This document shows positions 13,751 to 62,985 of a stretch of 64,000 bases of DNA, piece after piece. The DNA is taken from NCBI GenBank assembly GCA_003427395.1, contig BFEA01000037.1, positions 273,862 through 337,861 of the forward strand, given 5' to 3'. Under the pieces are notes generated by a model. The model had not been told where the DNA came from and searched no databases. It saw only the letters and a list, made by a program, of their open reading frames with translations. A program made the translations under genes and the position numbers. How positions within the stretch are numbered: position 1 is the first letter of the stretch; every line of letters starts with the position of its first letter. This DNA is from Chara braunii. Lineage: Eukaryota > Plantae > Charophyceae.

Positions 13751-13751
13751 T

Positions 13752-14927: not shown

Positions 14928-14931
14928 AAAT

Positions 14932-14949
14932 TGGCGTCGTTGTCGGGGA
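14932..14949 (+). promoter_or_regulatory. Primer-binding site, tRNA-Asp type
   Basis: TGGCGTCGTTGTCGGGGA, 16/18 identical to TGGCGCCGTTGCCGGGGA (plant tRNA-Asp PBS), 4 nt after the LTR CA. Confidence 0.75.
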
Positions 14950-15249
14950 CATGAAAAATTCTCGTGTCTGGAACGAGTCTGGGTCAGCATTAGCTTTGAG
15001 TTTTGATTAGGACATGAGAACTATTGACAATGTTCTTAACCATCAAAACCACTTATTATCCCCATTGAGCTATAATTCTCCTGGGAATCCCAGTTGGGTC
15101 TTATTTTTCATGTGTGAGGCACCACACTGGACTGGAGAAGGAGACTGGCATTATTTATTAGAGAGAGTCAGGCTTGATCACAAGTATGTTCTACGAACCT
15201 CTGACAATTGTGAGAAACTCGAAGAGAAGAGAGCAAATTAGATTCGGGC

Positions 15250-17610: not shown

Positions 17611-17673
17611 AAAGTAGGAAAAAAGAGGTCAAAAGTGACAAGAAGAGAGAGGAGAGAACATTAGGGAAGGTTC

Positions 17674-24983: not shown

Positions 24984-25064
24984 GGTGGCCGATAGAGCGG
25001 CCTGGTTCACGAAGAACCTGCATCCCCGGCTTCAAGGTAATTAAATGCTTTAGCCAGGGACGCT
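24984..25064 (-). other. Conserved three-hairpin structure (copy A)
   Basis: Stems are conserved with 52550-52630 while the loops differ. Confidence 0.5.
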
Positions 25065-26046: not shown

Positions 26047-26268
26047 AGTGTAAGGAGATTCCCCCAGAGCTCCAGACACTCCCTCTGTGTGACGGAACAA
26101 GAAAAGTGTGTTGCGAGCTGCGGCAAACATGAGTGAACAGCTGGCACAAAGTTGCGATGAAAACGGTGCTATGGGTCGAGGAGGTAGTGAATCCTGACCC
26201 GCATATGTTTTACACTAGTTGTCTACTGTGTGTTTTGGCGCAGCGGGAACGCTGGGCGGGGGTTTGGT

Positions 26269-33914: not shown

Positions 33915-36660
33915 AGGGAGACATGGGCAGTCATGACATAGAGAGAGAAGGCGAGAAGGGAGGAGACACACAAAAGTCAAACGTGAGAGAGAGAACCGGG
34001 CTTTTCGCTCCTTCACTATTGGCGCCATTTGCTAAAGGCGGCCATCCCTCCGCCACGCTCTGAACACAACGTCGTTGACAGAGGTGCTCGACAAGGAGTG
34101 GTACGCACAGGGAAGAACGGGTGACCAAGGTGTGTGTTGAGAGCGATTGACTGTTGATGTCAATCACTCATGCTTGAGCTCGGATGCGAGAGATAGTCAT
34201 CACCTACCTGTGACTTGTGCAATGCTTGGAGGGGGATGTCGACTCGCCCTCCGAAGACGAGAGATCCGGCATGTAGAGTTCGTGAGAGCGGGATCATTGA
34301 GCTGGTGAGCTCGTGGAAGATGCCCCAGGGGTTACCCCACGAGGGCAGCGCGGCTAGGGTCGCAAGAGAGTAGTGGACAAGTGGTGGCGAGGATCAGACC
34401 AGTTTGACGAGATTAGCGGCCTTGATCAGGGTGACATTGCGAAGTTGGGGCTGTGAGTGACTTACTCACCCGCACGTGAGCTCTTCGTTGGGCTTGTAGT
34501 GGCCAAGGTCTATCCTCTCGGTGGTTGTTATCTCCTTCGGATGTCCATAGTTGGACATGTCCGCCTCTATTGTTCTTTGATTGATCTTGGAATGGCAAGG
34601 GTGTGCCGCTACGTGCCCTCCGCTCCCATGTATGTAACCTGCGTCTGCGGCCGCTTTGCCAAGTTTAACGAGCACAAGTGTGACTCGCTCAAGAAGAGAG
34701 TGTATGCGTGAAAGTGTGTACAGGGCCAACTGTGTGGTAGTGATCCGTTGACGTCATCTGTGATTCCTGTCAGGCTGAATACTGTGAAGAGTCTCATGTA
34801 ATTCGAAGTATAGAGCCAGAGGATTGTCTTGACCAGAGAGAGAGATATATATAAAGAGAGAAAGGTGAATCAAGGGAGGATATTGAAAAGGAGTGAGATA
34901 AATTACACAATCAAGTCTCGTTGGCGTCATCACTGGCGCAAAGTCAGCTCCTCTAAGCGAGAGCCTGTGAGATCACTACGCATTGCAAAGAGAGAGGGAT
35001 GGCACACAAACTTTTGTTGTTGTCGACGTCATGACCTACGCGGGGATCGTTGTCCCGAGCGGAAGCCTATGAGATCACTACGAGCTGTTGGAGTAAGGGA
35101 AATCAGACCCCATGCTAGTAACATGAGTTCGGGTTTAAGCGGTGCAGTCACGCGGGCTTGACTACGCCCGTGATGGATTGAGAGGAGACTGTTGGGTCGA
35201 TGTCACCTGCTCACTCATTCCTCGGTGCTGCATTCGCCAATCGCCCACTTTGAATGCGGTAGTTGTCAATCCTGCGCGGTGTCGGAGGGCGCGGTGTCCC
35301 GGCCCTCCTCTGTGTATCGAGTCCCTGCCTAGTACCGGTCTCGTGTTCTGGTGTCGCAGCCAGTAGTCATCTCTACGATCCCTAGAACCCGGGCTGTACC
35401 GTGACGTGGACCGGGTCTGCTGGTGCCTGCCTTGGCAAAAGGTGCGCCACAAAGCTTTCCTTTGGTCCACCCAAGCTCGGCGCCCTGCTGTACAGCAGAG
35501 CACAACCGGCCTGTAGCCGTGGTAGCCGCTGGGTTCGCCCTGGGACGCGAAAGTATAGGGACGGGCACTGCTTTATCTATTGCGCGCTGAGTCCCCATTT
35601 GCCAGGTTATGGGTCAGGTATACATGGGACCAAGAAGAGAAAAGTAAAGAAAAAAAAAATATGAAAAAAAAAATGTAAAAGCTAACTGTCAAGCCTATGC
35701 AGTGACCTGAGCATTTGCCTTAATTCGGGGATGTCCTGTGGCTCAATTTATGAGTCTTAGTTGCTATTGGGTAACCCGATCTGCATGGAGTTGAAAGGAC
35801 CGTCTGGTCCTGATGGTTGTGATTCGGGCTAAGTGTAAGGGCGTGATGAGGACCCGTGCAGACATTTCAATTGCGCACTGGACACCTAGTAGCTGTGTTT
35901 GGGGGTAGATACAGTGGTGTCTAAAAAGGGAAAGTGTGAAAAGGAAAGAAAAAGGGAAAAGGTTGAAGGTCGGGCTTTAGATTTGTGCGTGGGCTCGTAT
36001 CGCCCTTCGGGCGAGGCTGCTGCGAGGAGGAATTTTGAAACGCCATCTTTTCCTTTTCTGTAAATACTATTATTATTATGGTTTATTGATATTATTATTN
36101 AGTTTTNTTTTCGCTCGATTGTCANATTCGGTTTACCTTTTAGNCTGTCATTTCGNNGGAAAGCCAACGNTTGGAAATCCGGACTTGAGCTATGTTGTGC
36201 GGCCTAANTGGGCCGACCCCTCATATATCGCTTGCTCCGAGCTTGTTCGANTGAGTGCCGCGCTGCAGGACCTCAAAAGANNGGCGACCCNCGGCCGCAT
36301 TGGTANGGANCCTATCACCCCCCCCGTGGAGGGTCATAAGCCCCCTCCTTGCTGTCGGACACGGGTACCCGTCGGGTATAGGCCAACGCGCGCGTTTTGA
36401 GGGAAGGAAAGTGCTTGTCACTATCCCGTTATGGGACTTCAGTTTTTGGGCAGTAGTCACATCGTGATAATTAGTGACTTGACAGTAGCACAGTGATTTC
36501 GAACCGTATCTCGACTGTTGAGTTTTCGGTTTCTGAATTATTTAGTTTTTATTTTGCTTTATATTTTTGGAATATTAAAACTACTAATGTGAGGGAAATT
36601 CGGAAAAGGCTAGAGCTGAACTCTTCTTTTAGAGCGCGGGGTCATAGCGAGGGGTGAGCC

Positions 36661-36666
36661 TATAAA
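36661..36666 (+). promoter_or_regulatory. Candidate TATA box for the U3 ORF
   Basis: CCTATAAAGAGGTGAGG ~135 bp upstream of ATG 36797; a similar motif precedes the 33322 homologue. Confidence 0.45.
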
Positions 36667-36796
36667 GAGGTGAGGCAAACGAGTCTTTGGCAGCGAGTCC
36701 TCTTTTGCCATGCTAACGCCGTTGGTCTGAGAAAATAGTGGATAGTCTGCGTGCACGAGTGTTGAGTCTTGAGCTGTGTCTAACTGGTTAGCGACT

Positions 36797-37324
36797 ATGT
36801 TACGTAGCAATGGCCTTTTTGGTTATAGGCCAAGGCACTTGAGGTTTTACTAGAGTTGGGCACCTATGTGTGAAGAGGGTGTTGCAGTGGATGTCTGTCT
36901 GAGTTATAGCAAGAGTGAAGGACAGGCTAGACTGAGAATCAATGTCTATGGGGGAAAGGAGCAAGAGATGAGGGAAGATGCGAAAATACACGGTGTGGTC
37001 ACCGAGGCTCGTAGCAGGGCGGAACGAAGATGCCGACGAGATGGGGTGACCGCGGCATTGCGAGTTACCATTACGTACCATGAGGAGGAGACCTCCACGG
37101 GTACGACAGAGAGGGAGCAACAAGAGCTGGACCGGGACTCAGAGGCGGAGTCCGAAGCTAGCGAGGACCTGACCCAGTCCTGGCACGGGCTGGAGCAGTG
37201 GAGGAGAGAGCACCCGCCAGCTGAGTCGGTAGAGGACGGACCCGAGGCCAGTTCGGCCCAGGGCGGAGCAAGGCCGACAGAGGCTAGGCTATCGAGTGCG
37301 GAGGCGAGTAATAGGCGGGACTGA
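36797..37324 (+). pseudogene. LTR (U3)-encoded protein, 175 codons with one TGG>TAG stop
   Basis: MLRSNGLFGYRPRHLRFY*SWAP is in frame with the 36866 ORF; family alignment with 683-1108 and 33322-33813. Confidence 0.7.
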
Positions 37325-40187
37325 ACCTAAAAGAAGGGGGGATATACGCGGGGGACAAGGGGACCCTCGGGGGTGCGGGTGAGGAGAAGAGGCGGATGTG
37401 CGCGCGTGTAAGGGCCAGTGAGTGCTCAGAGTGCTGACGTCATTTTTGACTTCCGCGAGCGAGAGGGAAAAGGGCGAGTACTCGTGAGTGGACAAAGGGT
37501 GAATTTTTGTCGGGGAATTGAGAGGGCGGACATTTACGGATCAAGAAAGCTCATGGCAGTTGCGAGCGGGGACGGGAGCAGTCCATGCGTGGCACTCCAC
37601 ATCGATTGAGTCGCTATGAGTTTTCATGACGGGGAAGGCTTCTCATGTGGCTATATACTTGTTGATGTCAACCATGCTTGCACCGCTTGCGTCTTTAGTT
37701 TCGGTGTGTGCCTCACGTTCTGGGGAGAAGGGAAGGTAACCAAGATTCGAAGGAGGTATGACGATGAAGACAGCCTTCCTCTTCAACTCCTGAGAAATCG
37801 TCATTCCGTGTGGGTTGCATCTGACGCCGAGGGATCTAGACGAGCTCAACTCGAGTTTACCCGAGCGGGGTGGGCTTCTCACCGGTTGAGGTACAACATA
37901 CGGTTGTTTGCTCACTAATCTGGGGCTTAACTTTGGCTGCTGATCATGGTGCACGAGCCAGGCCTGCTGAAAACACCTGGAGAGTCGCAAGGGCAAAGGA
38001 AGACGCTGAGACATTTCGGCTTCGCACCTATTATGTTGGTCTTCTTCGTCCCGTCTCGGTGACTGATCAGATGAAAATGATGACTACGATCGACGTGAAG
38101 TTTGCTAAACTTCGGCTAGCATTGCATGATCGTTCGTAGAGGAGACGGTTCTCGAACTTATCTGAGGGATTCTGCACGGGACGGGGTGCGAACTTACTGA
38201 TCAAAACTCGAGTGATATGTTACTGCATCAAGCGTTTGGCTCAATCAGAAACTGCTTGGTGAGGTCGTGTAAAAAGAAAATTAGTCGCTCTGCATTCACT
38301 CCCTTCAGTCTGGTTATTGCTTCTTGGCAAGTCCTCCCACGTAAAAACGGACTCAAGTCTAGCGTGATAACTTCAAGCGTGGTGCCATTGTCGAAGGGGG
38401 CTACTCAACCCAAATGCTCTAAACTGTTGTCACTAGTGGTTATAGTTCAGGAAGCGCTGGTAACGAGGGAAAAACAGGTTGATAGGGAAAAGGTGAGGGC
38501 AGTGTTTTTTAGAGTTCTAATAAACATCCAGTAATCATAGGGCACTCGTTTTTAGTATAGTGTTCTCCAGACGGTAAAATCGTTCTTAATGGAAAAGTTG
38601 TCTGTTGCAGTTTCGCTACCCCTTTTACACGTTGGACATCCTTTTACTCTTACTCTTGCCTCCCCGATAATGAAGAGTTAGTCGGCTTGATTTGATTAGC
38701 GCTAGCTGACGTTGAAGTACTCGTTGGCACAACGCCGGTGCCAGATCGTATCGAGTAGAAGAAAGGGGGGAGGGAGGTGGTAAATAGGTGAATCACGTAG
38801 CGAGGGGGTCTGACTCATTGCATGATGAATATACGATTGATTGTTGATTTGTGACACTCGTGTAATGTGTTAATCCAAGGTGAGACTCTTGGAGTGCATG
38901 ATCCACACTAGTTGGCAAGGCTGGAGTGGCCACCAAGAGACGTCATGATTTCGTTGTACTTAAACTTAATGTACCATTTGTATCTATGAGACCTATTAAC
39001 GGTTTGATGGGGCCAAATCTCCAGCTTCCCTCGCGTGGTGTGTTTGACAAAAGAATCCTTCTCGAAGCGGCTAACTGCAATTGCTCGTTCTTTCTGCAAA
39101 TGCCTGATCAGTGAAGCATAAAAGTTGGCCTCAGAAACCTGGTTTCTTGATAGAATGTTTGGCTGAGATGCTGTTTTATGGGATTAAGGCTTTCTCCTCT
39201 CAGAGGGTATCCGTGAGCTCGCTCGAGATGGGGAGGCTGGTTCTAGAAGGCTGGTCAGAAATTAGTGAATGGGCCAACAAAGCATCATGACTAAGTGCTA
39301 TTAGTTTTAACTAGAAGTACCAATCAGAGACTATGTTTGGTATGTAGGACTACAGGACAATAAGCCTGGAAAAGGCATACGGGGACCATTAAATTGCTTT
39401 TTTTTTGGGAATTCTGACATATAGTTCAATGAGCAGACAGCAAAAAGCCCTAAAGAAAGTTGCCTACTTGTTAGCCAAGTTTCTGTTGGATGGAGACTAA
39501 ATTGCACTACCATCATTACCTTTTCTTACCCATTTGACACAAATCTGGTTCTGCGCGAGCCCCCCCCGGGGCTAAGCAAATCAAGTGCGTAACCTTCTAG
39601 CCCTGGAAACAGCCTGTCATTGGTAAGTTAACTGACTCCTCATTTGTTGTGTGAAGTGACTTGGACTTTCACGGAGAAGCCTGAACCACTTCGTACTGTA
39701 GGAGAGATGAGTCCGTTACTAGCCAGTAATTGCTCACGGCATGAGCCAAGCTTGTCCGGGGTGATAAGCTCCTCATTACAAGGGTGCTGATTGCAGCGGA
39801 CATGCGCAGTCAGGCATCTGGGAAGAGAGCTATTATCAGTGGTGATAGGTGCGATTGGTCGTAGGTATTGTCGGCTTGTTTATGGTTGAAGGTAACTCCA
39901 GGGAACGCTTTATCTCACAGACAGTGTGTGGACTTCCCTGAGGGGAATAACTGACGACTCGGCACCTAAAAGTATGGTAGTATGTGCCGCCTGCAGAATT
40001 TCTTGGCAATCTTCGAGTCCTATTCAGTGACACACTCACCTACCCTATAAGTGGGTGTTGTGATCAGAGATTTTCCAAATGATACGAGCAATGGTTTGTG
40101 TAAGTTTTGCCTGAGAGGAAAATTGTCAACTTGATAAAAATCATTTATCCCGCCGTCAGGGTCAGCCATGGGTGGAAGTTCAATTCT

Positions 40188-40196
40188 CTATAAATA
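40188..40196 (+). promoter_or_regulatory. Candidate main LTR TATA box (CTATAAATA)
   Basis: Canonical plant-LTR TATA sequence; also present in the inverted copy near 62080. Confidence 0.55.
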
Positions 40197-41655
40197 CCTA
40201 AGGGCTGGTGGTGTGAGATACGTTTTCTGTGGGGTAGGAACACATGAATAGTATGCAAACGTACGGTATCTGGTTTAGTGAGCCTATAGTGAACCTGAGT
40301 ATGTGCAAGAGCGTCTCACTTCAAACTCGGCACAACCGGTGAGTCGTCGTCATCAGGATAGATGAAGGGAGTCCTATGGCATATTATTCCGTCTATCTCA
40401 CATGAGATAGCTCTAAGTGTGTACAAACCCAATCTCCNCAAGAGGCCACCGGGACAGCAAAAATACTACTCTGAATCACTACTCCGATTGACTTGAAAAG
40501 TGTTAGAGATATTTGCTCATGTGGTGGCAAGGCCAGAGAGAGTTCGAGAACAACTATACCCGTAAAATGAATCAATGTCCTCTTCAGCTCCCCACCGTTT
40601 GGCTGTGGGTCTGAGCAACCCTCCAAAAAGTTCTGATTGATGAGAGATGTCATTTACGCCCGTTGGTTTATGACCCTAAACCAATACGAAAGACGTTTGC
40701 AGAAAGATGGAAGGGGAGGATATACTGAGAGTGACCTACTCAATGTGTCGAGATAAAGCCAAAGGCTTGGAAGGAAGTTTGGTTCAGGACATCCACTGTT
40801 ATATAGAGCTTTTGATGGAGAAGGCGTTAAAGTTAGTGAAAAATCAAAAACATGTCGAGTACATCTTCTACATTCCTGGGTCAGACGGGAGATTACACAG
40901 TACCCTCTCGTCGATAGGATCCGTTGAGGAGGCAAGGAGAAAGGTTACTGGAAATCAGTAAAAGAGTTTAGACATCCACTCCGAGAGAAGCAAAATCACA
41001 TAAGGCATAGACATGGTCAGAGAAAATGAACCGGCTTCAGAAACATATCGCAACAGGACACACAGTATATCGACAAAACACGAACAACAATTGCATCAAT
41101 CAACACCTGATTAGTAATCACAGTTCCTAGATCAGTAGCCAGTCAGTTTCTCTGGACTACAGCTAATCAGTTTCATAAAAAAACATTTGAAATCGCACTC
41201 AGTTCAGCAGCAGTCAATACACTTTCACTTCAATCAGCAATCTCAGCAGATAGCAATCTCAGCAGATTTTGTACTAAGTAGACTTTGCCCTCAACGGTCT
41301 TTGCACTCGGCATCCAACAGTTATAACCAACGGATCAGTAATGAGTTGTACTATAACTACGATCATGTGTAATTTTCCTGTGGATGGTAATACCTTCGAA
41401 ATTTTACCACCGAGTGACCTGTGGGCAACAACAGTACCATCTTAGCAACGTTCAGTTTGGTACTATTTTGTTCCCAACTAGCAATTAATCAACGTTTGAT
41501 TGGCACTTGGTCAGCGCTCCGACAGATTCAGGAGCTAGCTCAGCAGCTACCTCTGCCTATTTAGCAGATTACAGTTGACCCGGCCTATAACAGACACTTG
41601 CTGGTAAAAACCAGCTTCTTCTCAGATTATCGGAGAGTAATCAATTCTCAAATAC

Positions 41656-42309
41656 ATGAGAGAGATCAACCCCATCACGGTTGACCAGTCGGTCCTTGAC
41701 AAACTCAACCTGATTGCTGCCAAGGAGAGCTTCCCCTACAAGTACGTTAGGATTGATGGGTTCAAGCGAGAGGACCTGTCAATTTTCATCGCGCTTACTG
41801 AGTTCGCTGAAGGAACAGTCAGCGACTTACGGATCTTTATGAAAAAGGGGAATGAGAAACACCCTCACTCTGATGCGGTGTGGGCAGCAGCAGCCGGGTA
41901 TGTGTAGTGGAAAGTTGAGAGGCTCCAAGAGAATACCAAGTTAGTCTATAGCTTTGGCCCTAAGCTTTTCACTGACTATCCCAAGCCTCCAGTCCCCTAC
42001 TACCTTACTGACGACTCTTATTGGGGTGGATTGGTGGACTTGGCCAAGAGGTACATATCGCCGGCAGTAATCGACTACGAGGCAGTGATCGAGCCCTTTC
42101 GGTTTCCTCATCTCAGGAGGGGCATTTTCTCTCAGCCCTATCTCCCAACTCTATGGGAGGAGTTTTGCGCCATGCTTGACTTCCGTATCATGGGACTTGG
42201 CTGAAAATGTTTGGAACTAGTAGGTTTCAGGTGGCTTTACATTCAGAAGCCACAACCTCAGAGAGTGCGGAGACTTGGCAAGAAGCCCAAACGACGGACA
42301 ACAAAGTGA
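41656..42309 (+). pseudogene. LTR-encoded accessory-domain protein (217 codons, two internal stops)
   Basis: The frame continues through TAG 41905 to RRTTK*; aligns with the open copy 13753-14265 and with the leader ORFs. Confidence 0.7.
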
Positions 42310-42792
42310 GAGACAAAGTGAAGTTCAGAGGGATGAGTGAGGACTCTTGATTGGTGCTGGCCAAGCTCTCTTCCATATGTACTCCCTTAGACTATTATGA
42401 GTTCTCATTCTTCCCTTATTCAATTGCTCCAATCGTTGCTCCTTGCATTGTTTTCGCTTGATGATTGTTTCCTTGGATGATTCTATCACAGCTCTCAAAA
42501 ATCAGATTGACATAATTGATGCATGCATAGCACTCCATAATTTTATTATTATTATTTGCATGATTTTATGTTGTTCCGAATCAAAATAAAAGATTCCTAA
42601 GACCGGGGACCGGTGAAGACCGTAATTGAAGGGTCTCGCTTGAAGCCGGACGCACACAACAGGAAGGGATTTGCATTATTTATTTTATTTTATTTATTGC
42701 TATCAACAACAAAATCCTGCGTGACAGCCTGTTGGCTTTTCGGTCGCCAGAAGCGGTCCAAAGTAGCCTGACTGGAAAAAATGCGACAAAAA

Positions 42793-42810
42793 TGGCGCAG
42801 TTGTCGGGGA
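42793..42810 (+). promoter_or_regulatory. Primer-binding site, tRNA-Asp type
   Basis: TGGCGCAGTTGTCGGGGA, 16/18 to the plant tRNA-Asp PBS, 4 nt after the LTR CA. Confidence 0.75.
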
Positions 42811-43110
42811 CATGAAAAGATTTTCGTTTCCGGAAAGAGCCTGGGTCATCATCTTTGAGCTTTGATTAGGGCGTGATAACTGCTGACAATATTATGAGCT
42901 TCATATTAAATTTATTATTTCCATTGAGTCTCGATTCTCTTGAGAATCACAGCTGCTAACTGTATCTTATTTATTCCTTGTGTGAGGTACCACACTGGAT
43001 CGGAGAAGGAGATTGATATTATTGACAGAAAATCTGACTTGAATTCAGGTATGCCTCGTGAGCCTATGATGTCCTTTGAATATTGAGAAGAGAAGAGAAG
43101 TATCAAGAGC

Positions 43111-43620
43111 TTGGAGATTTCATCAAGAATGCCAACTTCAGATGCATTGAGAGAACTCTCGAAAGTGACTATCAAAGGAATATTTCGCTATCAATATGAG
43201 CATTGCTGGGTCTATCATTCTAGCAATTTGGCCATCAGTGTAATGCTGACTCGCTTCTTGGAGGGAGATATTTATGATATCCGTCCCTATGTCAAGAAGG
43301 GAGACTGTGAGGATGGTGAGACCTTCAACTGGCTATGGGAAATTGCAATCCAGTCTCTTTATGATGAGAAGGCAGAATTAATTAAGCAGAAGAAGAAAGT
43401 GGAATGGGGTTTAATGCCAATGACATATGAGACTGTTCCAATCCCCCCTATACCTAATAGTTATTGCGATGGGACTAACTGGCTGCCAATAATCAACATG
43501 GTATTGACGAGGCAGAAAAGAAACAGTGGTCATGAGAACCGAAGAGATTTTAGCAGAAGAAATCAGGCAGAGAAGGCAGAAATTCGGCAGAGGTTCAGGC
43601 CCAAGTCAAGACGACGTTGA
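43111..43620 (+). CDS. Accessory ORF 1 (repeated unknown domain)
   Basis: Conserved with 15260-15600 (RFLEGDIYDIR.YVK.G...PPIPNSYC.G.NWLPIINMVL). Confidence 0.65.
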   Translation: MEISSRMPTSDALRELSKVTIKGIFRYQYEHCWVYHSSNLAISVMLTRFLEGDIYDIRPYVKKGDCEDGETFNWLWEIAIQSLYDEKAELIKQKKKVEWGLMPMTYETVPIPPIPNSYCDGTNWLPIINMVLTRQKRNSGHENRRDFSRRNQAEKAEIRQRFRPKSRRR

Positions 43621-43975
43621 GTGTCTCCTAAGGTCACTGAACAATCTAAGTAAGAAAGGGATGTTCCCATATGAGGTTGTCAGATATGAGATGGTCGAAA
43701 GCGGATGGGAGCAGGAACGGTTATGTGTACTGACATTCTATTTCACTGATGCAGTGTATGGGAGATGCTGGGGATTTGCTGAAGAGGTGGTACTGAAAGA
43801 GAAAGAAAGGCTTGAGAGGGAGAACAAATGCTTCACTGGATCTACTCGATTTACTGTCTTTGATGGACTCTCAGCCCCTCCCTTACCTGATATCAATCTA
43901 TCTAAAAACAATTGGTATACTATGATAAAGTTTGCATGGAAAGTGAAGAGAGTCCAAAAAGAATACTCTCAGTAG
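43532..43975 (+). CDS. Accessory ORF 2 (repeated unknown domain; internal deletion)
   Basis: MRTEEILAEEIRQRR...FPYEVVRYE...W.FAEEVVLKEKERLERENK...PPLP...NNW; conserved with 15620-16069. Confidence 0.65.
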   Translation: MRTEEILAEEIRQRRQKFGRGSGPSQDDVECLLRSLNNLSKKGMFPYEVVRYEMVESGWEQERLCVLTFYFTDAVYGRCWGFAEEVVLKEKERLERENKCFTGSTRFTVFDGLSAPPLPDINLSKNNWYTMIKFAWKVKRVQKEYSQ

Positions 43976-43989
43976 CCAGGATAACTACC

Positions 43990-44403
43990 GTGAGGGGCAA
44001 ACTCTATGAGGTGATAGGGTGTGATAATCCTTTTGTGATCCTGAGATATGAGACTTGTGTGAGAGGGCCCATAATATTTCACATCCCAGTGGTCAAATTC
44101 CTGAGTACTGGCAGCCTCGACGTAAGGATTTATGTACCAGCAGGCCTAGAAAAGGAAGACGATTACTTGAAGTGTCCGACAAGTGTTTATATTAGTCTCA
44201 TAAAAACCAAGGAGTGGCTTGAAAAGTTAAAGAGAAAGGTAACCTGGAGGAAGGAAGTAAGGCAATTTGAGAGGCTCCCTGAGTTATCAATTGCTAAGGG
44301 ATTTGAAGACATGAGAGATTGGGTGCCTCTGCTGAAAGCTATTGCCGAGAATGGTAGAGCAAGAGAAAAAGACTCCACTGTGATGATAAAATCCTACTTT
44401 TGA
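43990..44403 (+). CDS. Accessory ORF 3 (divergent copy of the repeated domain; GTG start candidate)
   Basis: RGKLYEV...NPFVILRYETCVRG.IIFHIPVVKFL.TGSLDVRIY.PA conserved with 16590-16990. Confidence 0.6.
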   Translation: MRGKLYEVIGCDNPFVILRYETCVRGPIIFHIPVVKFLSTGSLDVRIYVPAGLEKEDDYLKCPTSVYISLIKTKEWLEKLKRKVTWRKEVRQFERLPELSIAKGFEDMRDWVPLLKAIAENGRAREKDSTVMIKSYF

Positions 44404-44485
44404 GTACCTTTGAACACAGATTCGAGATCCCTGATTATGTCCAGCCTGAGATCTACCTTTCAGATATTGCTTATGATACTTAGCA

Positions 44486-44788
44486 ATGCCCAACTTGACT
44501 GAACAGCTAACACTACGAGTTGTGTTGGAAGGTAGAATAGTCAAGGTAGAAGGGACTCTTCGGATCTCTGACAGGAATCTTTCTACCTTGGATGAGCTTG
44601 AGTTTTTGCAGCCTTTCTTTGATCACATGAGAGATTCTGCCTTGAGAATTGTCACTGACGAAACTGAGATAAACTATTTATTAAAGGTGGTGAAAGTGGC
44701 AACTACTGAAGAGTATCATACCACACTTCTCGGGAACGGGTCTCTCTTGCAAGAAGGATCAATAGCGGCCGTAAACAATGCAAATTGA
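44486..44788 (+). CDS. Accessory ORF 4, unknown
   Basis: VK.EGT.RISD..L.TLDELE.LQPFFD.MR.SALR.VTD.TEINYLLKVVKV conserved with 17080-17310. Confidence 0.6.
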   Translation: MPNLTEQLTLRVVLEGRIVKVEGTLRISDRNLSTLDELEFLQPFFDHMRDSALRIVTDETEINYLLKVVKVATTEEYHTTLLGNGSLLQEGSIAAVNNAN

Positions 44789-45068
44789 TTATGAGATTAT
44801 AGACCTAACTCGATATTTTATGATTCGGGGTACTATAAAAGGGTATGATAGAAGATTGAGTAGAGATGATGAAAGAAAATTGATTGAAGATTACATTGGA
44901 AGGCTGAGAAGAATTGCACTGCCCTTGATCACTACCCAATCCATTATTGCTTATACTCTATATGTACAAAACTCTCAAGGGGTAAAACAGAAGAGAAGAG
45001 AGAAACGAGCCTGTATCCCTTGCGAGAAGAGAGAGATTGAACGGCAAGGAAGAAGAGGACGAGAGTGA
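44778..45068 (+). CDS. Accessory ORF 5, unknown
   Basis: MQ.DYEIID.T.YFMIR...RDDER.LI.DYI.RLRRIALPLITTQSIIAYTL conserved with ~17348-17600. Confidence 0.6.
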   Translation: MQIDYEIIDLTRYFMIRGTIKGYDRRLSRDDERKLIEDYIGRLRRIALPLITTQSIIAYTLYVQNSQGVKQKRREKRACIPCEKREIERQGRRGRE

Positions 45069-45101
45069 CAGGAAGAGGGTAGAGAATATCCGAGAAAATC
45101 T

Positions 45102-46772
45102 ATGGTCAAGATGGCAGGACGAGGAAGACCGAGTTCATCTGCAAGGACCAATGAAAAGGCCTTGGTTGGGGTTATACGGGAATTGGTCGAGAGAGTAGAC
45201 ACTATAAAAGGAGGGTCAGATATTGCAAGAGCAAAGAGGCCAGATGAGAGGATTTCATGTTTCAGAGGGCCTCAGGTTAATGATTTCTTGGACGAGTATG
45301 AATTATTTGGACTCAGTTATCGCTGGACAGATAAGGAACGGCTTAAGCATCTTTCATCTTACTGTGATACTGACTCAAGGTTGGGTGTTCAGGAACTAAT
45401 GGAAGGTCCCACTACATGGGAAGAGGTCAAGGAGAGAATGAAAAAGGAATTTGAGAAGGACTCAGTCCCAACTACAACCAAGGATTTACTCAACATCAGG
45501 AGAGCCAAGTATGACACTTTCAATGTTTTTCTTCAGACCTTCATCCGAACAGCAAGAAAAATTCCATATTTGGACGAAGCCCAGAGATGTCATATATTCT
45601 TAACAAATTTTACTGACACTGTAAGAACTCTACCTACAGTCTTTCGCAAGAAATGGTCACTAGATCAGATCAGTACTTTGGCTAAGGATTGGGAGACTGA
45701 AAACGGTATGAACAGAGGGAACAATCTGAGTGCTGAGAATATTTTTCATAAGGTAATGGCTAACTTTATGCCTGCAAAGCCTGCAATACATGTTGTGGAT
45801 GACAGAGGGAAGAAGAAAGTTAAAAGAGAAGAGGATGAGGACGATGATGATGATGAAAGCTATGGTAAAAATGGGGATTCCTCCAGATCCAAAAAGAATG
45901 GAAAGAATGGTGATGGAGAAAACAGAGAAAGAAGAAAATATGATGAGCGTCCTAAGAGGAGTTTTGTTTGCTACTATTATGGTGAAGGAGGTCACACTAC
46001 CACCTATTGCAAACCCCTTGAGGAGGATGTGAGGAGTGGGGTGGCAAAGAAGGATGCAATGGACCATGTCTGTGATAGCTCATGGAATAAATTGGACCCC
46101 AAACATCCAGGAGGTATGAGGCTTCTTGCTCTTAGACATGATGAAAAGATGAAGATTAAGAAGAAGAGAAAGGCTATTCTGAATGTTCATTTCCTCATTG
46201 GAGGATTGCCTAATGAACTAATACAGAGAACAAGCGACCTTCATACCACGAATGGGCTATCTTTGCAGTCCTTGACGTTGACAGAGTGTGTGCCCAGTGA
46301 GACTTCTACAAGTGAGTCTCCATCAGAAGAGAATCCTACTTCTCAGAATTCTTATGAATTAGTAGAATCCTCTTCCAATGAGAGGGATCGCCTTCTGGCT
46401 AACATGATGTCGTTTCATGGCGATTTACCCCCAGAACTCGTCATGGAACCTAGTGTCCAGATTGGTGAAGTGAGAAACCTCCAAACTCGTATGACGCCTC
46501 AAATGATAGAGGAAAAGGAGAGGAGGAAGGCTAAAGAGTCATTGATTAACATCCTTGATGACCCTGACCAGGAATGTTCACAAGGAAAGAATGAACAGGG
46601 GAGAAAGAGGAAATTTATTCTCAAGAGTGACTTGGATGACGGGACAGTGATTTCTGATGTAATTGCTAAAATACTGGAAGAGACGGAAGTGACATTGTCT
46701 TTCAAGGAAGCAACGACTCTAGCACCCAAACTGAGAGAAGAGTTAAAAAAGTTAATCGAGAAGAAAAAGTAG
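45102..46772 (+). CDS. gag: Gag of element B (556 aa open)
   Basis: Long ORF after the PBS and before the protease; capsid-like FRGPQVNDFLDEYE...TWEEVKERMKKEF; degenerate knuckle CYYYGEGGHTTTYC. Confidence 0.88.
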   Translation: MVKMAGRGRPSSSARTNEKALVGVIRELVERVDTIKGGSDIARAKRPDERISCFRGPQVNDFLDEYELFGLSYRWTDKERLKHLSSYCDTDSRLGVQELMEGPTTWEEVKERMKKEFEKDSVPTTTKDLLNIRRAKYDTFNVFLQTFIRTARKIPYLDEAQRCHIFLTNFTDTVRTLPTVFRKKWSLDQISTLAKDWETENGMNRGNNLSAENIFHKVMANFMPAKPAIHVVDDRGKKKVKREEDEDDDDDESYGKNGDSSRSKKNGKNGDGENRERRKYDERPKRSFVCYYYGEGGHTTTYCKPLEEDVRSGVAKKDAMDHVCDSSWNKLDPKHPGGMRLLALRHDEKMKIKKKRKAILNVHFLIGGLPNELIQRTSDLHTTNGLSLQSLTLTECVPSETSTSESPSEENPTSQNSYELVESSSNERDRLLANMMSFHGDLPPELVMEPSVQIGEVRNLQTRMTPQMIEEKERRKAKESLINILDDPDQECSQGKNEQGRKRKFILKSDLDDGTVISDVIAKILEETEVTLSFKEATTLAPKLREELKKLIEKKK

Positions 46773-53145: not shown

Positions 53146-53382
53146 TGTGCAGAGATGAGAGACAAGCAAAAGAAGACGGAAGAAGGAAGCAGTGCAGGTT
53201 GAAAAGGGCTACTGTGTACTTTAAGAAGAAGAGTGCGAGTGAAGCGGACGTGTGGAAAGTCAGGACAACGCAAAACTATTGCGCGAGCGTCGCCGCAAGT
53301 GGCGATGAGAGTGAGTGAGTCTACCACTAGTCTAGACTATTTTATACTGGCTGATCAAGCATTTCCACCAAGCGGGGACGCT

Positions 53383-58611: not shown

Positions 58612-61600
58612 CAGGTTTGCCAGGCCGAACGTCTGGAGGCCCCTAAGCTGACCCTCGAACGTTCGGGCGTTCGGGTCCCCGTACGGAGCCCGAACCTGTC
58701 CCCGTACGGACCCCGCAAAAACATATTTTGGCACCTAAATATTATTATTTATTTCTGAATTTTTTTGTGTGAGTTATTTGTGATGTAAGGTATCTCCCTG
58801 TTAATATTGAAGCCATTCTGTTAAGCCAAAAAAAACATGAAAAATCGGCAAAGATGGTGGTGTCAAAACTTGCTTGCTTACAGAATCTCAATCTAATACA
58901 ATATTTATCATAATATTTATTAACACGATAAAACCAAAGGCTGACTAGCATGAAACTAACCATCACTTTGCTAAGATCTCACTTAAATATAACCGGTGAA
59001 TGCCTGGTCGCTAAAGCCGACCCAAAGGGTCGTGTCTCTTGTACTTTTCGTAGTTGTCTAGTAACGTCTGTTTGATTGGGATTTCGCAAGAATCTATCGG
59101 ATGGCCCGATGACTGCCCAACACAGCCCGCACTTCCAATGGTCCCTGTCCTAGTGTCTCTGTCCCATCGAGCATTGCATGATTTTGCCCTCCTTTCCGCT
59201 TTTCTGCAAACCAATCAGGGACAAAGACATAAATTGACAACTCCTATTTCTTCACCCTAGGAAAAGAAGTGTACAAATATCGTTTTCAGGTGTCGGTACA
59301 CGATTGTTAAAAAAAAGGGAAGCTCAATCTTTCCTTCTACTTATGCACTGGTAGCATATATTTCACTAACTGAAATTGCAAGCAATTAGTGAATCGTTGG
59401 CCTAGGTGGTGCAGTGACAGAGTGTCGCATCCTTGCAGGATAAAGGGAGACTTTGTGAAGACTAGCTCTCGTCAGTCCCCCTTTCTCACTCACACCGTCA
59501 CAACTGTTGTCGCACTTTTTCCAGTCAGGCTACTTTGGACCACTTCTGGCGACCGGAAAGCCAACAGGCTGTCACGCAGGATTTTGTTGTTGATAACAAT
59601 AAATAAAATAAAATAAATAATGCAAATCCCTCCCTGTTGTGTGCGTTCGGCTTCGAGCGAGACCCTTCAATTACGGTCTTCGCCGGTCCCCGGTCTTAGG
59701 AATCTTTTATTTAAATTCGGAACAACAAAAAATCATGTAAATAATAATTATAAAATTATGGAGTGCTATGCATGCATCAATTATGTCAATCTGATTTTTT
59801 GGAACTGTGATAGAATCATCCAAGGAAACATCAAGCGAAAACAATGCAAGGAGCAACGATTGGAGCAATTGAATAAGGGAAGAATGAGAACTCATAATAG
59901 TCTAAGGGAGTACATATGGAAGAGAGCTTGGCCAGCACCAATCAAGAGTCCTCACTCATCCCTCTGAACTTCACTTTCCGTCGTTTGGGCTTCTTGCCAA
60001 GTCTCCGCACTCTCTGAGGTTGTGGCTTCTGAATGTAAAGCCACCTGAAACCTACTAGTTCCAAACATTTTCAGCCAAGTCCCATGATACGGAAGTCAAG
60101 CATGGCGCAAAACTCCTCCCATAGAGTTGGGAGATAGGGCTGAGAGAAAATGCCCCTCCTGAGATGAGGAAACCGAAAGGGCTCGATCACTGCCTCGTAG
60201 TCGATTACTGCCGGCGATATGTACCTCTTGGCCAAGTCCACCAATCCACCCCAATAAGAGTCGTCAGTAAGGTAGTAGGGGACTGGAGGCTTGGGATAGT
60301 CAGTGAAAAGCTTAGGGCCAAAGCTATAGACTAACTTGGTATTCTCTTGGAGCCTCTCAACTTTCCACTACACATACCCGGCTGCTGCTGCCCACACCGC
60401 ATCAGAGTGAGGGTGTTTCTCATTCCCCTTTTTCATAAAGATCCGTAAGTCGCTGACTGTTCCTTCAGCGAACTCAGTAAGCGCGATGAAAATTGACAGG
60501 TCCTCTCGCTTGAACCCATCAATCCTAACGTACTTGTAGGGGAAGCTCTCCTTGGCAGCAATCAGGTTGAGTTTGTCAAGGACCGACTGGTCAACCGTGA
60601 TGGGGTTGATCTCTCTCATGTATTTGAGAATTGATTACTCTCCGATAATCTGAGAAGAAGCTGGTTTTTACCAGCAAGTGTCTGTTATAGGCCGGGTCAA
60701 CTGTAATCTGCTAAATAGGCAGAGGTAGCTGCTGAGCTAGCTCCTGAATCTGTCGGAGCGCTGACCAAGTGCCAATCAAACGTTGATTAATTGCTAGTTG
60801 GGAACAAAATAGTACCAAACTGAACGTTGCTAAGATGGTACTGTTGTTGCCCACAGGTCACTCGGTGGTAAAATTTCGAAGGTATTACCATCCACAGGAA
60901 AATTACACATGATCGTAGTTATAGTACAACTCATTACTGATCCGTTGGTTATAACTGTTGGATGCCGAGTGCAAAGACCGTTGAGGGCAAAGTCTACTTA
61001 GTACAAAATCTGCTGAGATTGCTATCTGCTGAGATTGCTGATTGAAGTGAAAGTGTATTGACTGCTGCTGAACTGAGTGCGATTTCAAATGTTTTTTTAT
61101 GAAACTGATTAGCTGTAGTCCAGAGAAACTGACTGGCTACTGATCTAGGAACTGTGATTACTAATCAGGTGTTGATTGATGCAATTGTTGTTCGTGTTTT
61201 GTCGATATACTGTGTGTCCTGTTGCGATATGTTTCTGAAGCCGGTTCATTTTCTCTGACCATGTCTATGCCTTATGTGATTTTGCTTCTCTCGGAGTGGA
61301 TGTCTAAACTCTTTTACTGATTTCCAGTAACCTTTCTCCTTGCCTCCTCAACGGATCCTATCGACGAGAGGGTACTGTGTAATCTCCCGTCTGACCCAGG
61401 AATGTAGAAGATGTACTCGACATGTTTTTGATTTTTCACTAACTTTAACGCCTTCTCCATCAAAAGCTCTATATAACAGTGGATGTCCTGAACCAAACTT
61501 CCTTCCAAGCCTTTGGCTTTATCTCGACACATTGAGTAGGTCACTCTCAGTATATCCTCCCCTTCCATCTTTCTGCAAACGTCTTTCGTATTGGTTTAGG

Positions 61601-62985
61601 GTCATAAACCAACGGGCGTAAATGACATCTCTCATCAATCAGAACTTTTTGGAGGGTTGCTCAGACCCACAGCCAAACGGTGGGGAGCTGAAGAGGACAT
61701 TGATTCATTTTACGGGTATAGTTGTTCTCGAACTCTCTCTGGCTTTGCCACCACATGAGCAGATATCTCTAACACTTTTCAAGTCAATTGGAGTAGTGAT
61801 TCAGAGTAGTATTTTTGCTGTCCCGGTGGCCTCTTGTGGAGATTGGGTTTGTACACACTGAGAGCTATCTCATGTGAGATAGACGGAATAATATGCCATA
61901 GGACTCCCTTCGTCTATCTTGATGACGACGACTCACCGGTTGTGCCGAGTTTGAAGTGAGACGCTCCTGCACAGACTCAGGTTCACTATAGGCTCACTAA
62001 ACCAGATACCGTACGTTTGCATACTATTCATGTGTTCCTACCCCACAGAAAACGTATCTCACACCACCAGCCCTTAGGTATTTATAGAGAATTGAACTTC
62101 CACCCACGGCTGACCCTGACGGCGGGATAAATGATTTTTATCAAGTTGACAATTTTCCTCTCAGGCAAAACTTACACAAACCATTGCTCGTATCATTTGG
62201 AAAATCTCTGATCACAACACCCACTGATAGGGCAGATGAGTGTGCCACTGAATAGGACTCGAAGATTGCCAAGAAATTCTGCAGGCGGCACATACTACCA
62301 TACTTTTAGGTGTCGAGTCGTCAGTTATTCCCCTCAGGGCAGTCCACACACTGTCTGTGAGATAAAGCGTTCCCTGGAGTTACCTTCAACCATAAACGAG
62401 TATGGGCAGTACCTACGACCAATCACACCTATCACCACTGATAATAGCTCTCTTCCCAGATGCCTGACTGCGCATGTCCGCTGCAATCAGCACCCTTGTA
62501 ATGAGGAGCTTATCACCCCGGACAAGCTTTGCTCATGCCGTGAGCAATTACTGGCTAGTATTCTCTATTATGTAAGCTACAAATATATAAATTTTCATGA
62601 CATTTGTCACATCCCAAAAAAAACGAGAAATCGCCAAAGATGGTCGTGTCAAAAACGTGCTCGCCCACTCAATAATTTCATTCTCATTTTTTTTCCCCTA
62701 ACTTTTATCATTATTATTTATTTTTAGTTATTGATTTTTATTTCAAATTTGGTAAAGAATTTGGATGTTACTATAAGGCAAATGTTGTTTAGCTTATTCT
62801 TATGCATAACATATATAATTTTTATATTTTTTGGAATTCTTTTTTTTTTTTTTTTTTTTTTTTGGTTGGGGGGGGGGGGGGGGGGAGCGCGTTCGGCCAA
62901 ACGGCCGAACGTGTCGAGAATGGGTCTCCAACGTTCGGGCGCTCAGGTTCGGGCGTTCGGCCCGTCACGAACGCCGACAACCCTG
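58612..62985. mobile_element. Non-autonomous hAT-like DNA transposon enclosing an inverted LTR segment
   Basis: 8-bp TSD AGTCTATC (58604-58611, 62986-62993); TIRs CAGGTTTGCC / GACAACCCTG; subterminal CCGAAC/GTTCGG repeats at both ends; no transposase ORF. Confidence 0.75.
59508..62560 (-). repeat. 3' LTR of element B, second part, inverted
   Basis: Reverse complement of 39717-42788, ending GTGCGACA at 59508; ORFs 60368-60619 and 61314-61568 mirror 41656 and 40707. Confidence 0.9.

What the first reader, a model, noticed from the sequence alone, without database searches (positions are those of the whole stretch)
41656..45068. Operon-like array of accessory ORFs built from one unrecognised ~120-aa domain upstream of gag
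Seen: five closely packed or overlapping ORFs lie between the PBS and gag, and each is conserved at protein level in the diverged element A. Three of them, plus the ORF inside the LTR (41656), share a pattern visible by eye: L..L....(F)PY..VRY...lt.F..G..(Y/S)D(I/L/V)RI(Y/F)...W..A....EK.RL.......P.PP(I/V/L)P......(N/Y)W..(I/L). Known: plant Gypsy elements with an extra 5' ORF (Ogre, some Tat) typically carry one. I do not recognise this domain or a paralogous array like it. Inference: a diversified, retrotransposon-encoded accessory protein family (e.g. anti-silencing or host-interaction factors) expressed from a polycistronic or spliced leader. This is the best candidate for an undescribed system here.
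Basis: partly seen in the sequence, partly recalled or inferred. Interest (0 to 1): 0.88.

Follow-up and report, generated by a model that had tools for sequence, protein, structure and literature searches.

The report
Accessory gene cassette in Chara retrotransposon
A giant Ty3/gypsy retrotransposon of the stonewort alga Chara carries, between its 7.5-kb LTR and gag, a tightly packed train of small genes built from two protein domains with no known relatives. The genes were kept by selection, which is unusual because eukaryotic retrotransposons normally carry at most one or two extra genes.

Summary
Element B has four copies of a ~125-aa domain (D1): one in the LTR at 41656 and three between the candidate PBS and gag. 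The diverged element A has five. Paralogues match at phmmer E 1e-5 to 1e-10.

The last two ORFs before gag share a second, unrelated ~60-aa domain (D2; BLASTP E 2e-7).

A third copy in the Chara braunii assembly (L005) has the same layout. All six internal ATGs are conserved in the three copies (73-79% nucleotide identity).

dN/dS is 0.07-0.42 in frame, against 0.11-0.20 for gag and 0.5-1.8 off frame.

D1 has no match in Pfam, PDB sequences or Rfam. A profile search of 1.84 billion proteins found only eight hits: four Chara braunii gene models and four contigs of one metagenome. A confident AlphaFold model (pLDDT 88) matches no solved, viral or Atlas fold convincingly.

One of three oligo-dT RNA-seq runs covers the cassette through gag without splice joints.

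Copy B itself is defective.

Best reading: a selected, multi-cistronic accessory cassette of a Chara-specific gypsy lineage. Its function is unknown and its translation mechanism is only inferred.

The scan's first readers noted 34 or more similar cassettes elsewhere in this genome (unchecked). I found no paper describing them.

The parts
35280..42788 (+). 5' LTR of element B (7,509 bp, TG...CA). Its last 1.1 kb carries the first D1 gene.
   Evidence: Self-BLAST: 35280-39716 matches 53402-58546 directly at 95%, and 39717-42789 matches 62560-59507 inverted at 98%. Termini and flanks were read.
41656..42309 (+). D1a (B1-type): D1 domain plus a ~95-aa C-terminal extension, inside the LTR. Broken in B by in-frame stops at 41905-41907 and 42202-42204.
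   Evidence: dN/dS against A is 0.145. Intact 224-aa orthologue at L006:12701-13375. The same two stops occur in the inverted LTR copy.
42572..42748 (+). Most conserved stretch of the LTR end (putative U5). RNA-seq depth peaks here.
   Evidence: 80-84% identity across A, L003 and L005 against ~73% elsewhere. Depth peak and loose ends. No convincing covariation.
42792..42810 (+). Candidate primer-binding site (starts TGGCGC, 3 nt after the LTR end).
   Evidence: Position and conservation in A and L005. No tRNA was available to test complementarity.
43129..43620 (+). D1b (B2) cistron, 163 aa from the conserved ATG, with a basic tail.
   Evidence: AlphaFold model pLDDT 88. dN/dS 0.26-0.28.
43532..43975 (+). 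D1c (B3) cistron. Its ATG lies 89 nt inside the B2 tail in another frame. In B it lacks 18 aa including strand beta3.
   Evidence: dN/dS 0.13-0.32. The B3-type clade has 100/100 support.
43936..44403 (+). D1e (B4) cistron. Its ATG overlaps the end of B3. In B it is truncated by a 1-nt deletion near 44392; the frame kept in relatives runs to about 44481.
   Evidence: 10 of 20 RNA reads carry an extra base after 44392. A and L005 keep the longer frame.
44486..44788 (+). D2a (orf5), 100 aa, acidic (pI 4.8).
   Evidence: dN/dS 0.26-0.42.
44778..45068 (+). D2b (orf6), 96 aa, basic (pI 10.0). Its ATG overlaps the orf5 stop by 11 nt.
   Evidence: dN/dS 0.07-0.28.
45102..46772 (+). gag (556 aa), starting 33 nt after the orf6 stop.
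   Evidence: Pfam Retrotrans_gag. Downstream pieces are PR, RT, RNase H and integrase zinc domain.
59507..62560 (-). Inverted copy of the last 3 kb of the LTR (the missing end of the 3' LTR), with a second D1a copy at 60074-60634.
13651..17638 (+). The same cassette in diverged element A: A1 13651-14265, A2 15251-15644, A3 15622-16066, A3b 16216-16581, A4 16536-17093, orf5 17080-17310, orf6 17348-17638. Several have stops or frameshifts. gag starts at 17674.

Best explanation
This is a real accessory gene cassette of a giant Ty3/gypsy LTR retrotransposon lineage, so far seen only in Chara (Charophyceae).

Layout. In its working form the cassette has five cistrons of one orphan domain (D1, ~125 aa). 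The first sits in the 3' end of the 7.5-kb LTR and the other four follow the candidate PBS. Two cistrons of a second orphan domain (D2, ~60 aa plus a tail) come next, directly ahead of gag.

Origin (shown). The paralogues arose by old tandem duplications. Each type has since been kept by purifying selection in several diverged element lineages.

Expression (inferred). The cistrons are separate translation units with their own conserved ATGs. They are packed end to end with short gaps or overlaps, including a shared-base TGATG junction in L005. I infer that they are read from the unspliced genomic RNA by termination-reinitiation or a similar coupling mechanism. Leaky scanning, programmed frameshifting and splicing look less likely.

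Function (inferred). The conserved residues of D1 are structural: a hydrophobic core, the YD(I/V)R(I/L)Y strand, two Trp and a PxPPxP loop. There is no catalytic-looking constellation, and several cistrons end in basic tails. I therefore infer non-enzymatic binding or adaptor proteins that serve the element's replication cycle (particle assembly, RNA handling, or dealing with host factors). Which of these applies is unknown.

State of these copies (shown). Copy B and copy A in this window are decayed and not functional themselves.
For: Homology among copies:
- phmmer and jackhmmer on six-frame pieces.
- D2 paralogy: BLASTP E 2e-7 and jackhmmer.

Selection:
- dN/dS A-B is 0.13-0.26 for the D1 ORFs, 0.40 and 0.13 for the D2 ORFs, 0.146 for gag and 0.11-0.23 for pol. 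Off-frame controls give 0.5-1.7.
- The three-way comparison with L005 gives 0.07-0.42 in frame against 0.5-1.8 off frame.
- 13 of the 22 listed RNA-read variants inside cassette ORFs are synonymous.

Architecture:
- The same order (D1 x5, D2 x2, gag) is found in the Chara braunii locus L005.
- All six internal ATGs are conserved in A, B and L005.
- Junctions are tight or overlapping.
- In the metagenome contig L002, the B2-type ORF (35-39% identical to B2) ends in a stop, and a B3-type ATG follows in another frame.
- Paralogue types form 100/100 clades that span element lineages.

Orphan status:
- Pfam finds nothing.
- The profile search of 1.84e9 representatives gives 8 hits, all from Chara braunii or one ENA metagenome.
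- PDB sequences give nothing.

Fold:
- AlphaFold pLDDT 88, pTM 0.78.
- Foldseek PDB best E 0.028; VIA-align best Z 5.2; Atlas TM below 0.5; BFVD best E 2.4e-3 with TM 0.26.

Expression:
- 752 reads of oligo-dT RNA-seq run X8 cover about 41.9-47.0 kb continuously, with no splice joint in the cassette.

Mechanisms excluded:
- ATG count is 48 against 41 expected, so there is no AUG depletion.
- The only slippery-like site at the B3/B4 junction is not conserved in A.
Against: - No protein-level evidence exists.
- RNA coverage comes from one of three runs. It has no strand information and consists mostly of reads 90-95% alike, that is, from relatives. Genomic DNA contamination of that library was not controlled.
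- Efficient reinitiation after ORFs of 100-190 codons is not normal in eukaryotes. No TAV-like factor was found in the ORFs scanned.
- Depth of about 10x could miss rare spliced or subgenomic RNAs.
- Both window copies are broken, so no intact cassette was seen in one piece. B transposed, or was copied, with an already broken LTR gene, because the stops are shared by both LTR copies. The D1a gene is therefore not needed in cis.
- D1 also occurs next to DUF7869 and Mutator-like ORFs with no retroelement nearby (L004). The domain is therefore not exclusive to this gypsy lineage.
- dS is near saturation for the A-B and B-C pairs.
Confidence: 0.6

Rival explanations
1. The cassette is expressed through spliced or internally promoted subgenomic mRNAs, one or a few cistrons each, as retroviral accessory genes are. 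It is not read from a polycistronic genomic RNA.
For: This is the usual eukaryotic solution. The RNA-seq was shallow (about 5-15x), unstranded and mostly from relatives, so rare joints could be missed. The LTR copy D1a has a TATA-like motif about 70 nt upstream of its ATG.
Against: No joint with 3 or more reads was seen within 41100-47000 apart from one strand-switch artefact. ORFs overlap or abut, leaving no room for acceptor-plus-leader sequences. Overlapping stop/start junctions are more typical of coupling.
Confidence: 0.2
2. The ORFs were originally one long repeat protein, or are fused by programmed frameshifting. The separate overlapping ORFs are products of decay in dead copies.
For: Both window copies are decayed. 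Frames alternate 0/+1/0. Overlaps of 40-90 nt at B2/B3 and B3/B4 would allow a frameshift.
Against: Frame changes, stops and ATGs sit at the same aligned positions in three copies that are 73-79% identical, and in a far more distant metagenome relative. Each frame carries its own purifying-selection signal up to its stop. The one slippery-like heptamer is not conserved.
Confidence: 0.08
3. D1 belongs primarily to another mobile element or to the host. The gypsy lineage merely captured it as cargo with no role in retrotransposition.
For: In L004 a complete D1 ORF and a degenerate second copy lie just after a DUF7869 ORF, with a Mutator-like ORF about 7 kb downstream. There is no gag/pol there and no DNA similarity to the window.
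Against: In three diverged gypsy copies the genes hold fixed positions and are as constrained as gag. All four Chara braunii gene models that carry D1 are transposon chimeras. No free-standing host gene was found among 1.84e9 representatives.
Confidence: 0.08
4. These are chance ORFs, or an assembly artefact in repeat-rich DNA.
For: The assembly shows an odd inversion of the 3' LTR end and scattered N.
Against: There is significant paralogy, low dN/dS, an independent copy in another assembly and in a metagenome, and a confident fold prediction.
Confidence: 0.01

Closest known systems
Ogre (and Retrosat2) plant Ty3/gypsy elements with an extra ORF upstream of gag
   Same: They are giant elements with very long LTRs. 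[quoted passage not shown] Retrosat2 has LTRs over 3.2 kb and an ORF0 found in no other organism (PMC3485330). In both, a sense-strand orphan ORF lies 5' of gag-pol.
   Different: Here there are six to seven cistrons from two paralogous domain families rather than one or two ORFs, and one of them lies inside the LTR. Junctions are overlapping or abutting. No land-plant protein appeared among the profile hits. The host is a charophyte alga.
Caulimoviridae (e.g. CaMV) polycistronic pregenomic RNA
   Same: These are reverse-transcribing relatives of Ty3/gypsy. A row of small, closely spaced or overlapping ORFs precedes the capsid/pol genes, and they are translated from one RNA by reinitiation (review PMC5902531, and my own knowledge).
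   Different: Caulimoviruses have no LTRs and no integrase. They depend on the TAV transactivator, and no Pfam-recognisable TAV was seen in the ORFs scanned. Their upstream ORFs (movement, transmission and virion-associated proteins) are unrelated to each other, not tandem paralogues. Reinitiation is only inferred here.
Stop/start coupling in non-LTR retrotransposons (SART1 UAAUG, LINE-1 ORF1-ORF2)
   Same: A eukaryotic retroelement translates a downstream ORF after terminating the upstream one at an overlapping or adjacent stop/start (my own knowledge, not checked in a paper here). The L005 junction TGATG is of this type.
   Different: Those elements are bicistronic. Here up to seven cistrons would have to be read in series.
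Accessory ORFs of giant or complex LTR retroelements (planarian Burro, bdelloid LTR elements, foamy-like fish ERVs)
   Same: They are LTR retroelements whose coding capacity has been enlarged by accessory genes (PMC6431247, PMC5408684).
   Different: Their extras are mostly recognisable captured domains (BIR, MATH, dUTPase, esterases, env), and are placed 3' or fused into the polyprotein. Here the domains are orphan, tandemly duplicated and 5' of gag.
Genes embedded in retroviral LTRs (MMTV sag, part of HIV nef)
   Same: A protein-coding gene lies inside the LTR (my own knowledge). D1a lies in the last 1.1 kb of the LTR.
   Different: Those genes lie in U3 and are read from 3'-terminal mRNAs. 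Whether D1a lies in U3, R or U5 is unknown. It is a paralogue of the leader genes.

Membership tests
Ty3/gypsy (Metaviridae) LTR retrotransposon | Direct long terminal repeats with TG...CA ends | tested here: met
   35280-42788 matches 53402-58546 directly, plus an inverted remainder at 59507-62560. Termini are TG and CA.
Ty3/gypsy (Metaviridae) LTR retrotransposon | gag followed by pol in the order PR-RT-RNase H-IN | tested here: met
   Pfam finds Retrotrans_gag, Asp_protease, RVT_1, RT_RNaseH and Integrase_H2C2 in that order, on fragmented frames.
Ty3/gypsy (Metaviridae) LTR retrotransposon | PBS complementary to a tRNA 3' end next to the 5' LTR, and a PPT before the 3' LTR | tested here: inconclusive
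   A TGG-initiated conserved motif lies 3 nt after the LTR, and a G-rich tract precedes 53402. No tRNA gene was found in the held sequence for comparison.
Ogre/Retrosat2-type 5' additional ORF | Sense ORF between the 5' LTR and gag | tested here: met
Ogre/Retrosat2-type 5' additional ORF | Sequence homology to the land-plant ORF1/ORF0 proteins | tested here: not met
   The profile search of 1.84e9 representatives returned only Chara braunii and one metagenome. Reference ORF1/ORF0 sequences were not compared directly.
Caulimovirus-type TAV-dependent polycistronic translation | Series of closely spaced or overlapping ORFs on one RNA | tested here: met
   Junctions run from a 33-nt gap to an 89-nt overlap, with TGATG in L005. 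Read coverage is continuous with no splice joints.
Caulimovirus-type TAV-dependent polycistronic translation | Element-encoded transactivator (Pfam Cauli_VI) | tested here: not met
   No such hit in the 18 window ORFs scanned.
Caulimovirus-type TAV-dependent polycistronic translation | Demonstrated reinitiation | not testable with these tools
   Needs Ribo-seq or reporter assays.
RTBV-type leaky scanning | Upstream cistrons free of internal AUG | tested here: not met
   48 ATG in 43129-45101 against 41 expected.
Programmed -1/+1 frameshift fusion | Conserved slippery site in the overlap | tested here: not met
   The only candidate (TAAAAAC at 43902) is not conserved in A.
Gelsolin/ADF-like or Crl-like fold (best structural rows) | Structural match clearly above background (Z 8 or more, or Foldseek E below 1e-3) | tested here: not met
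   Best is Z 5.2 (3rpj) and Z 4.5-5.1 for gelsolin domains. Foldseek best E is 0.028 with TM 0.33-0.36.
Any Pfam-A family | Score above the gathering threshold | tested here: not met
   No hit for any D1 or D2 sequence, even at E up to 5.

The most novel reading that the evidence does not exclude
Chara genomes may harbour a whole lineage of 'complex' Ty3/gypsy retroelements. Their 5' leaders would be true polycistronic gene trains (6-11 cistrons, by the scan's other notes), translated by serial termination-reinitiation and encoding protein folds not seen elsewhere. That would be an operon-like, virus-grade gene organisation inside a eukaryotic LTR retrotransposon, not described in the literature I could search.
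Probability: 0.35. Interest if true: 0.85.

Novelty: new variant of a known kind. Interest (0 to 1): 0.66.

Why it matters
LTR retrotransposons are textbook two-gene elements (gag and pol), and extra ORFs are rare and usually single. A selected train of six to seven small genes from two orphan domain families, with conserved start codons and overlapping stop/start junctions, raises three points.

- Charophyte retroelements would have reached a coding complexity comparable to complex retroviruses or caulimoviruses.
- It would give a natural eukaryotic system for studying serial translation of long cistrons from one mRNA.
- It would add two protein domains of unknown fold class whose role (particle building, RNA handling or countering host silencing) can be tested.

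It also matters for annotation. In the published Chara braunii gene set these ORFs are merged into chimeric 'reverse transcriptase domain-containing' gene models spanning up to about 95 kb.

Tried and rejected
Searches that returned nothing:
- The search for homologous proteins returned nothing with the B2 ORF, with the 17-sequence D1 alignment, or with the D2 alignment. The exhaustive profile search did find relatives, so these blanks only reflect the word index.
- The search for related loci on JGI metagenomes first failed for lack of a conserved block. With the B3-type alignment it then found no relative.
- ESM Atlas feature search: best score 0.87, phage hypotheticals, below the useful range.
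- PDB sequence profile searches for D1 and D2: nothing meaningful.
- Rfam on 41000-46000: nothing.
- ARAGORN on all held sequence found no tRNA, so the PBS could not be matched.
- Literature searches for Chara plus retrotransposon, polycistronic or additional ORF found no description. The Chara genome paper (Cell 2018) is not held.

Comparisons and models that gave no signal:
- hhalign of D1 against D2 and of D1 against gag: unrelated.
- The D2 structure model is poor (pLDDT 58), so I ran no fold search on it.
- RNAalifold on the conserved LTR end gave no convincing covariation.

Complex prediction for the acidic orf5 with the basic orf6: no verdict (score 0.01). This is neither for nor against binding.

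Readings I rejected:
- Leaky scanning.
- Conserved programmed frameshift.
- A DIRS-like reading of the inverted repeat. The integrase zinc domain and ordinary LTR ends argue for an inversion or misassembly instead.


Full report
**Setting**

The window holds two diverged Ty3/gypsy-type elements. Element B has a 7,509-bp LTR (35280-42788, TG...CA). Its 3' partner is 53402-58546, in direct orientation at 95%. The remaining 3 kb of that partner is present but inverted (59507-62560, 98%), with breakpoints that correspond exactly to 39716/39717. I read this as an inversion or an assembly error, not a different element type.

A TGG-initiated motif 3 nt after the LTR end is conserved in A and in a Chara braunii copy. 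It is the candidate PBS, but no tRNA was available to confirm it. Downstream come gag (Pfam Retrotrans_gag) and fragmented PR, RT, RNase H and integrase pieces.

Element A (about 13650-26050) is 72-77% identical to B over the internal region. It lacks recognisable LTRs in the window.

With stop-free natural pieces as queries against all 1645 six-frame pieces of the window, paralogous copies find each other at E 1e-5 to 1e-10. I call this domain D1.

B has four copies:
- D1a at 41656-42309, inside the LTR, with a ~95-aa extension and two in-frame stops.
- D1b at 43129-43620.
- D1c at 43532-43975.
- D1e at 43936-44403.

A has five copies.

The two ORFs next to gag (44486-44788 and 44778-45068) do not carry D1. 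They are paralogues of each other (33% identity over 52 residues, E 2e-7). They form a second family, D2, again with two copies in A. Profile comparison shows that D1 is unrelated to D2 and to gag.

**The frames were coding and were selected**

- Between A and B, dN/dS is 0.145 (D1a), 0.26 (D1b), 0.14 (D1c), 0.21 (D1e), 0.40 (orf5) and 0.13 (orf6). This compares with 0.146 for gag and 0.11-0.23 for pol pieces.
- The same codon columns read one or two bases out of frame give 0.5-1.7.
- A third copy from the public Chara braunii assembly (L005) is 79% identical to A and 73% to B. It gives 0.07-0.42 in frame and 0.5-1.8 off frame.
- dS is near saturation for the pairs involving B. The A-L005 pair (dS 0.35-0.99) is the more reliable one and gives 0.22-0.32, against 0.20 for gag.
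- 22 of the variants listed from RNA reads of closer relatives fall in cassette ORFs, and 13 of these are synonymous.

**The architecture is ancestral, not decay**

L005 has the same order: D1 x5, D2 x2, gag. All six internal start codons (D1b, D1c, D1e, orf5, orf6, gag) are ATG at the same aligned positions in A, B and L005.

Junctions are tight:
- D1c starts 89 nt inside the D1b tail, in another frame.
- D1e starts about 40 nt before the D1c stop.
- In L005 the D1e stop and the orf5 ATG share a base (TGATG).
- orf6 starts 11 nt before the orf5 stop.
- gag starts 33 nt after the orf6 stop.

In a metagenome contig whose B2-type protein is only 35-39% identical to B2, that ORF ends in a stop and a B3-type ORF starts about 30 nt later in a different frame. 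In a tree of the domain copies, the B1-type and B3-type copies form clades with 100/100 support, and both clades contain copies from different elements. The duplications therefore predate the divergence of the element lineages.

**Copy B is defective**

- D1a has two stops, and they are shared by the inverted LTR copy. They were therefore most likely present when the LTRs were last copied from one template.
- D1c lacks 18 residues including the most conserved strand.
- The fifth D1 copy is missing.
- D1e is shortened by a 1-nt deletion near 44392, where half the RNA reads from relatives have an extra base.
- pol is in pieces.

Intact versions exist elsewhere, for example a 224-aa D1a-type ORF at L006:12701-13375.

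**Identity of the domains**

Pfam finds nothing for any copy, even at E up to 5.

An exhaustive profile search of 1.84 billion cluster representatives found eight proteins:
- Four are Chara braunii gene models. Three are chimeras with RVT_1 and one has a weak Mutator-like hit.
- Four are stand-alone 121-161-aa ORFs on short contigs of one ENA metagenome assembly.

The host is therefore Chara or a close relative. The sequencing-run search agrees: DNA runs of a single coded organism from 2018 hold the stretch.

With 17 sequences, AlphaFold gives a confident D1 model (pLDDT 88, pTM 0.78). The topology is helix, three-stranded meander, long helix, hairpin, PxPPxP loop, helix. No library gives a convincing match:

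| Library | Best result |
|---|---|
| Foldseek PDB | E 0.028, TM 0.33-0.36 |
| VIA-align, 48,161 chains | Z 5.2 (Crl); gelsolin domains Z 4.5-5.1, below the tool's own background of 7-8 |
| ESM Atlas | TM below 0.5 |
| BFVD viral | E 2.4e-3 at TM 0.26 |

I treat the gelsolin, Crl and GNAT resemblances as unproven leads. The D2 model is poor (pLDDT 58; strand-strand-helix-strand plus a disordered basic tail).

**Expression**

Of three oligo-dT RNA-seq runs of the same species label, one (X8) laid 752 reads on 41100-47000. They cover about 41.9 kb through gag at roughly 5-15x. The other two runs laid 17 and 9 reads. Most reads are 90-95% alike, so they come from related copies.

No splice joint was found in the cassette. 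There is no strand information, and no start or end pile-ups. Coverage begins where conservation among family members begins (about 41950), so it does not locate the transcription start.

**How it most likely works**

- Shown: a conserved, selected, multi-cistron layout, and transcription of the family in at least one sample, most simply as unspliced RNA.
- Inferred: translation of the cistrons from that RNA by termination-reinitiation or coupling.
- Against leaky scanning: ATG is not depleted (48 against 41 expected).
- Against programmed frameshifting: the only slippery-like site is not conserved.
- Not excluded: splicing or internal promoters.
- Function: open. The conserved D1 positions look structural and several cistrons end in basic tails, so I favour non-enzymatic binding or adaptor proteins serving the element.
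- A test of orf5-orf6 pairing, suggested by their opposite charges, gave no verdict.
- A complication: a complete D1 ORF plus a degenerate second copy lie beside DUF7869 and Mutator-like ORFs in another Chara braunii locus without any retroelement genes. D1 has therefore moved between mobile-element contexts, or that locus is debris.

**Comparison and novelty**

Additional ORFs in LTR retrotransposons are known, upstream or downstream of gag-pol (PMC7264820). Ogre carries 1-2 extra ORFs and LTRs up to 6.5 kb (PMC6431247). Retrosat2 has an orphan ORF0 (PMC3485330). Planarian and rotifer elements carry accessory genes (PMC6431247, PMC5408684).

New here:
- The number of cistrons.
- Their origin by tandem duplication of two orphan domains.
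- One cistron lying inside a 7.5-kb LTR.
- The operon-like junctions, whose nearest functional analogue is the caulimovirus pregenomic RNA (PMC5902531).

I found no paper describing this in Chara. The Chara genome paper itself is not in the library.

The scan's first readers noted 34 or more similar 'operon-like' cassettes upstream of gag on other pieces of this genome, one of them with 'two unrecognised paralogue families'. These notes are unchecked and I did not count them as evidence, but they suggest the feature is genome-wide.

**Verdict**

This is a real feature and a new variant of a known kind (LTR retrotransposon with additional ORFs). The function is unknown and the translation mechanism is unproven. 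The copy in hand is dead, so interest lies in the family rather than in this locus.

Noticed in passing
window 58547-62560 (breakpoints 58546/58547 and 62560/62561; equivalent of 39716/39717): The last 3 kb of the 3' LTR is present in inverted orientation after about 960 bp of unrelated sequence. It is 98% identical to the 5' LTR end, against 95% for the direct part. This is either a real inversion or a misassembly.
   Followed up: partly
window 42572-42748 (also 14720-14930; L003 7970-8148 and 10831-10999; L005 45298-45532): The end of the LTR is far better conserved (80-84%) than its surroundings. It shows a sharp RNA-seq depth peak with many reads that run off into unlike sequence, so many element families share it. 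RNAalifold gave no convincing covariation.
   Followed up: partly
L004 11480-13932 (Chara braunii BFEA01000279): A complete D1 ORF (12943-13491) and a degenerate second copy follow a DUF7869 ORF (Pfam E 1.3e-25). A weak Mutator-like ORF lies about 7 kb downstream. There is no gag/pol and no DNA similarity to the window, so D1 also occurs outside the gypsy context.
   Followed up: partly
L003, L005, L006 (Chara braunii GCA_003427395.1): The published gene models GBG69355, GBG64722 and GBG80537 span 38-95 kb. They splice D1 ORFs to RT fragments of other elements. These are annotation chimeras in transposon-dense DNA.
   Followed up: partly
window 41583-41590: A TATA-like motif (CTATAA) lies about 70 nt upstream of the D1a ATG inside the LTR. 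It could be a promoter for the LTR gene or for the element. This was not tested.
   Followed up: no
window 45102-46772 vs 18338-18583: The gag zinc knuckle of B has lost its second cysteine (C-Y-Y-Y... where A has C-x-x-C). This is one more defect of copy B.
   Followed up: no
window 12842-13271 (minus strand): A reverse-transcriptase fragment of another element abuts the degraded 5' end of element A. A appears truncated or interrupted there, and no LTR pair was found for it.
   Followed up: no
window 36866-37324 and 52669-53169(-): Other ORFs of element B have no Pfam match: a 152-aa ORF in the LTR and a 166-aa antisense ORF between pol and the 3' LTR. The giant LTR may carry further genes.
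   Followed up: no
runs X7, X8, X9: There is an about 80-fold difference in reads on this element family between RNA-seq samples of one study. This is either sample-specific transposon expression or DNA contamination of one library.
   Followed up: no
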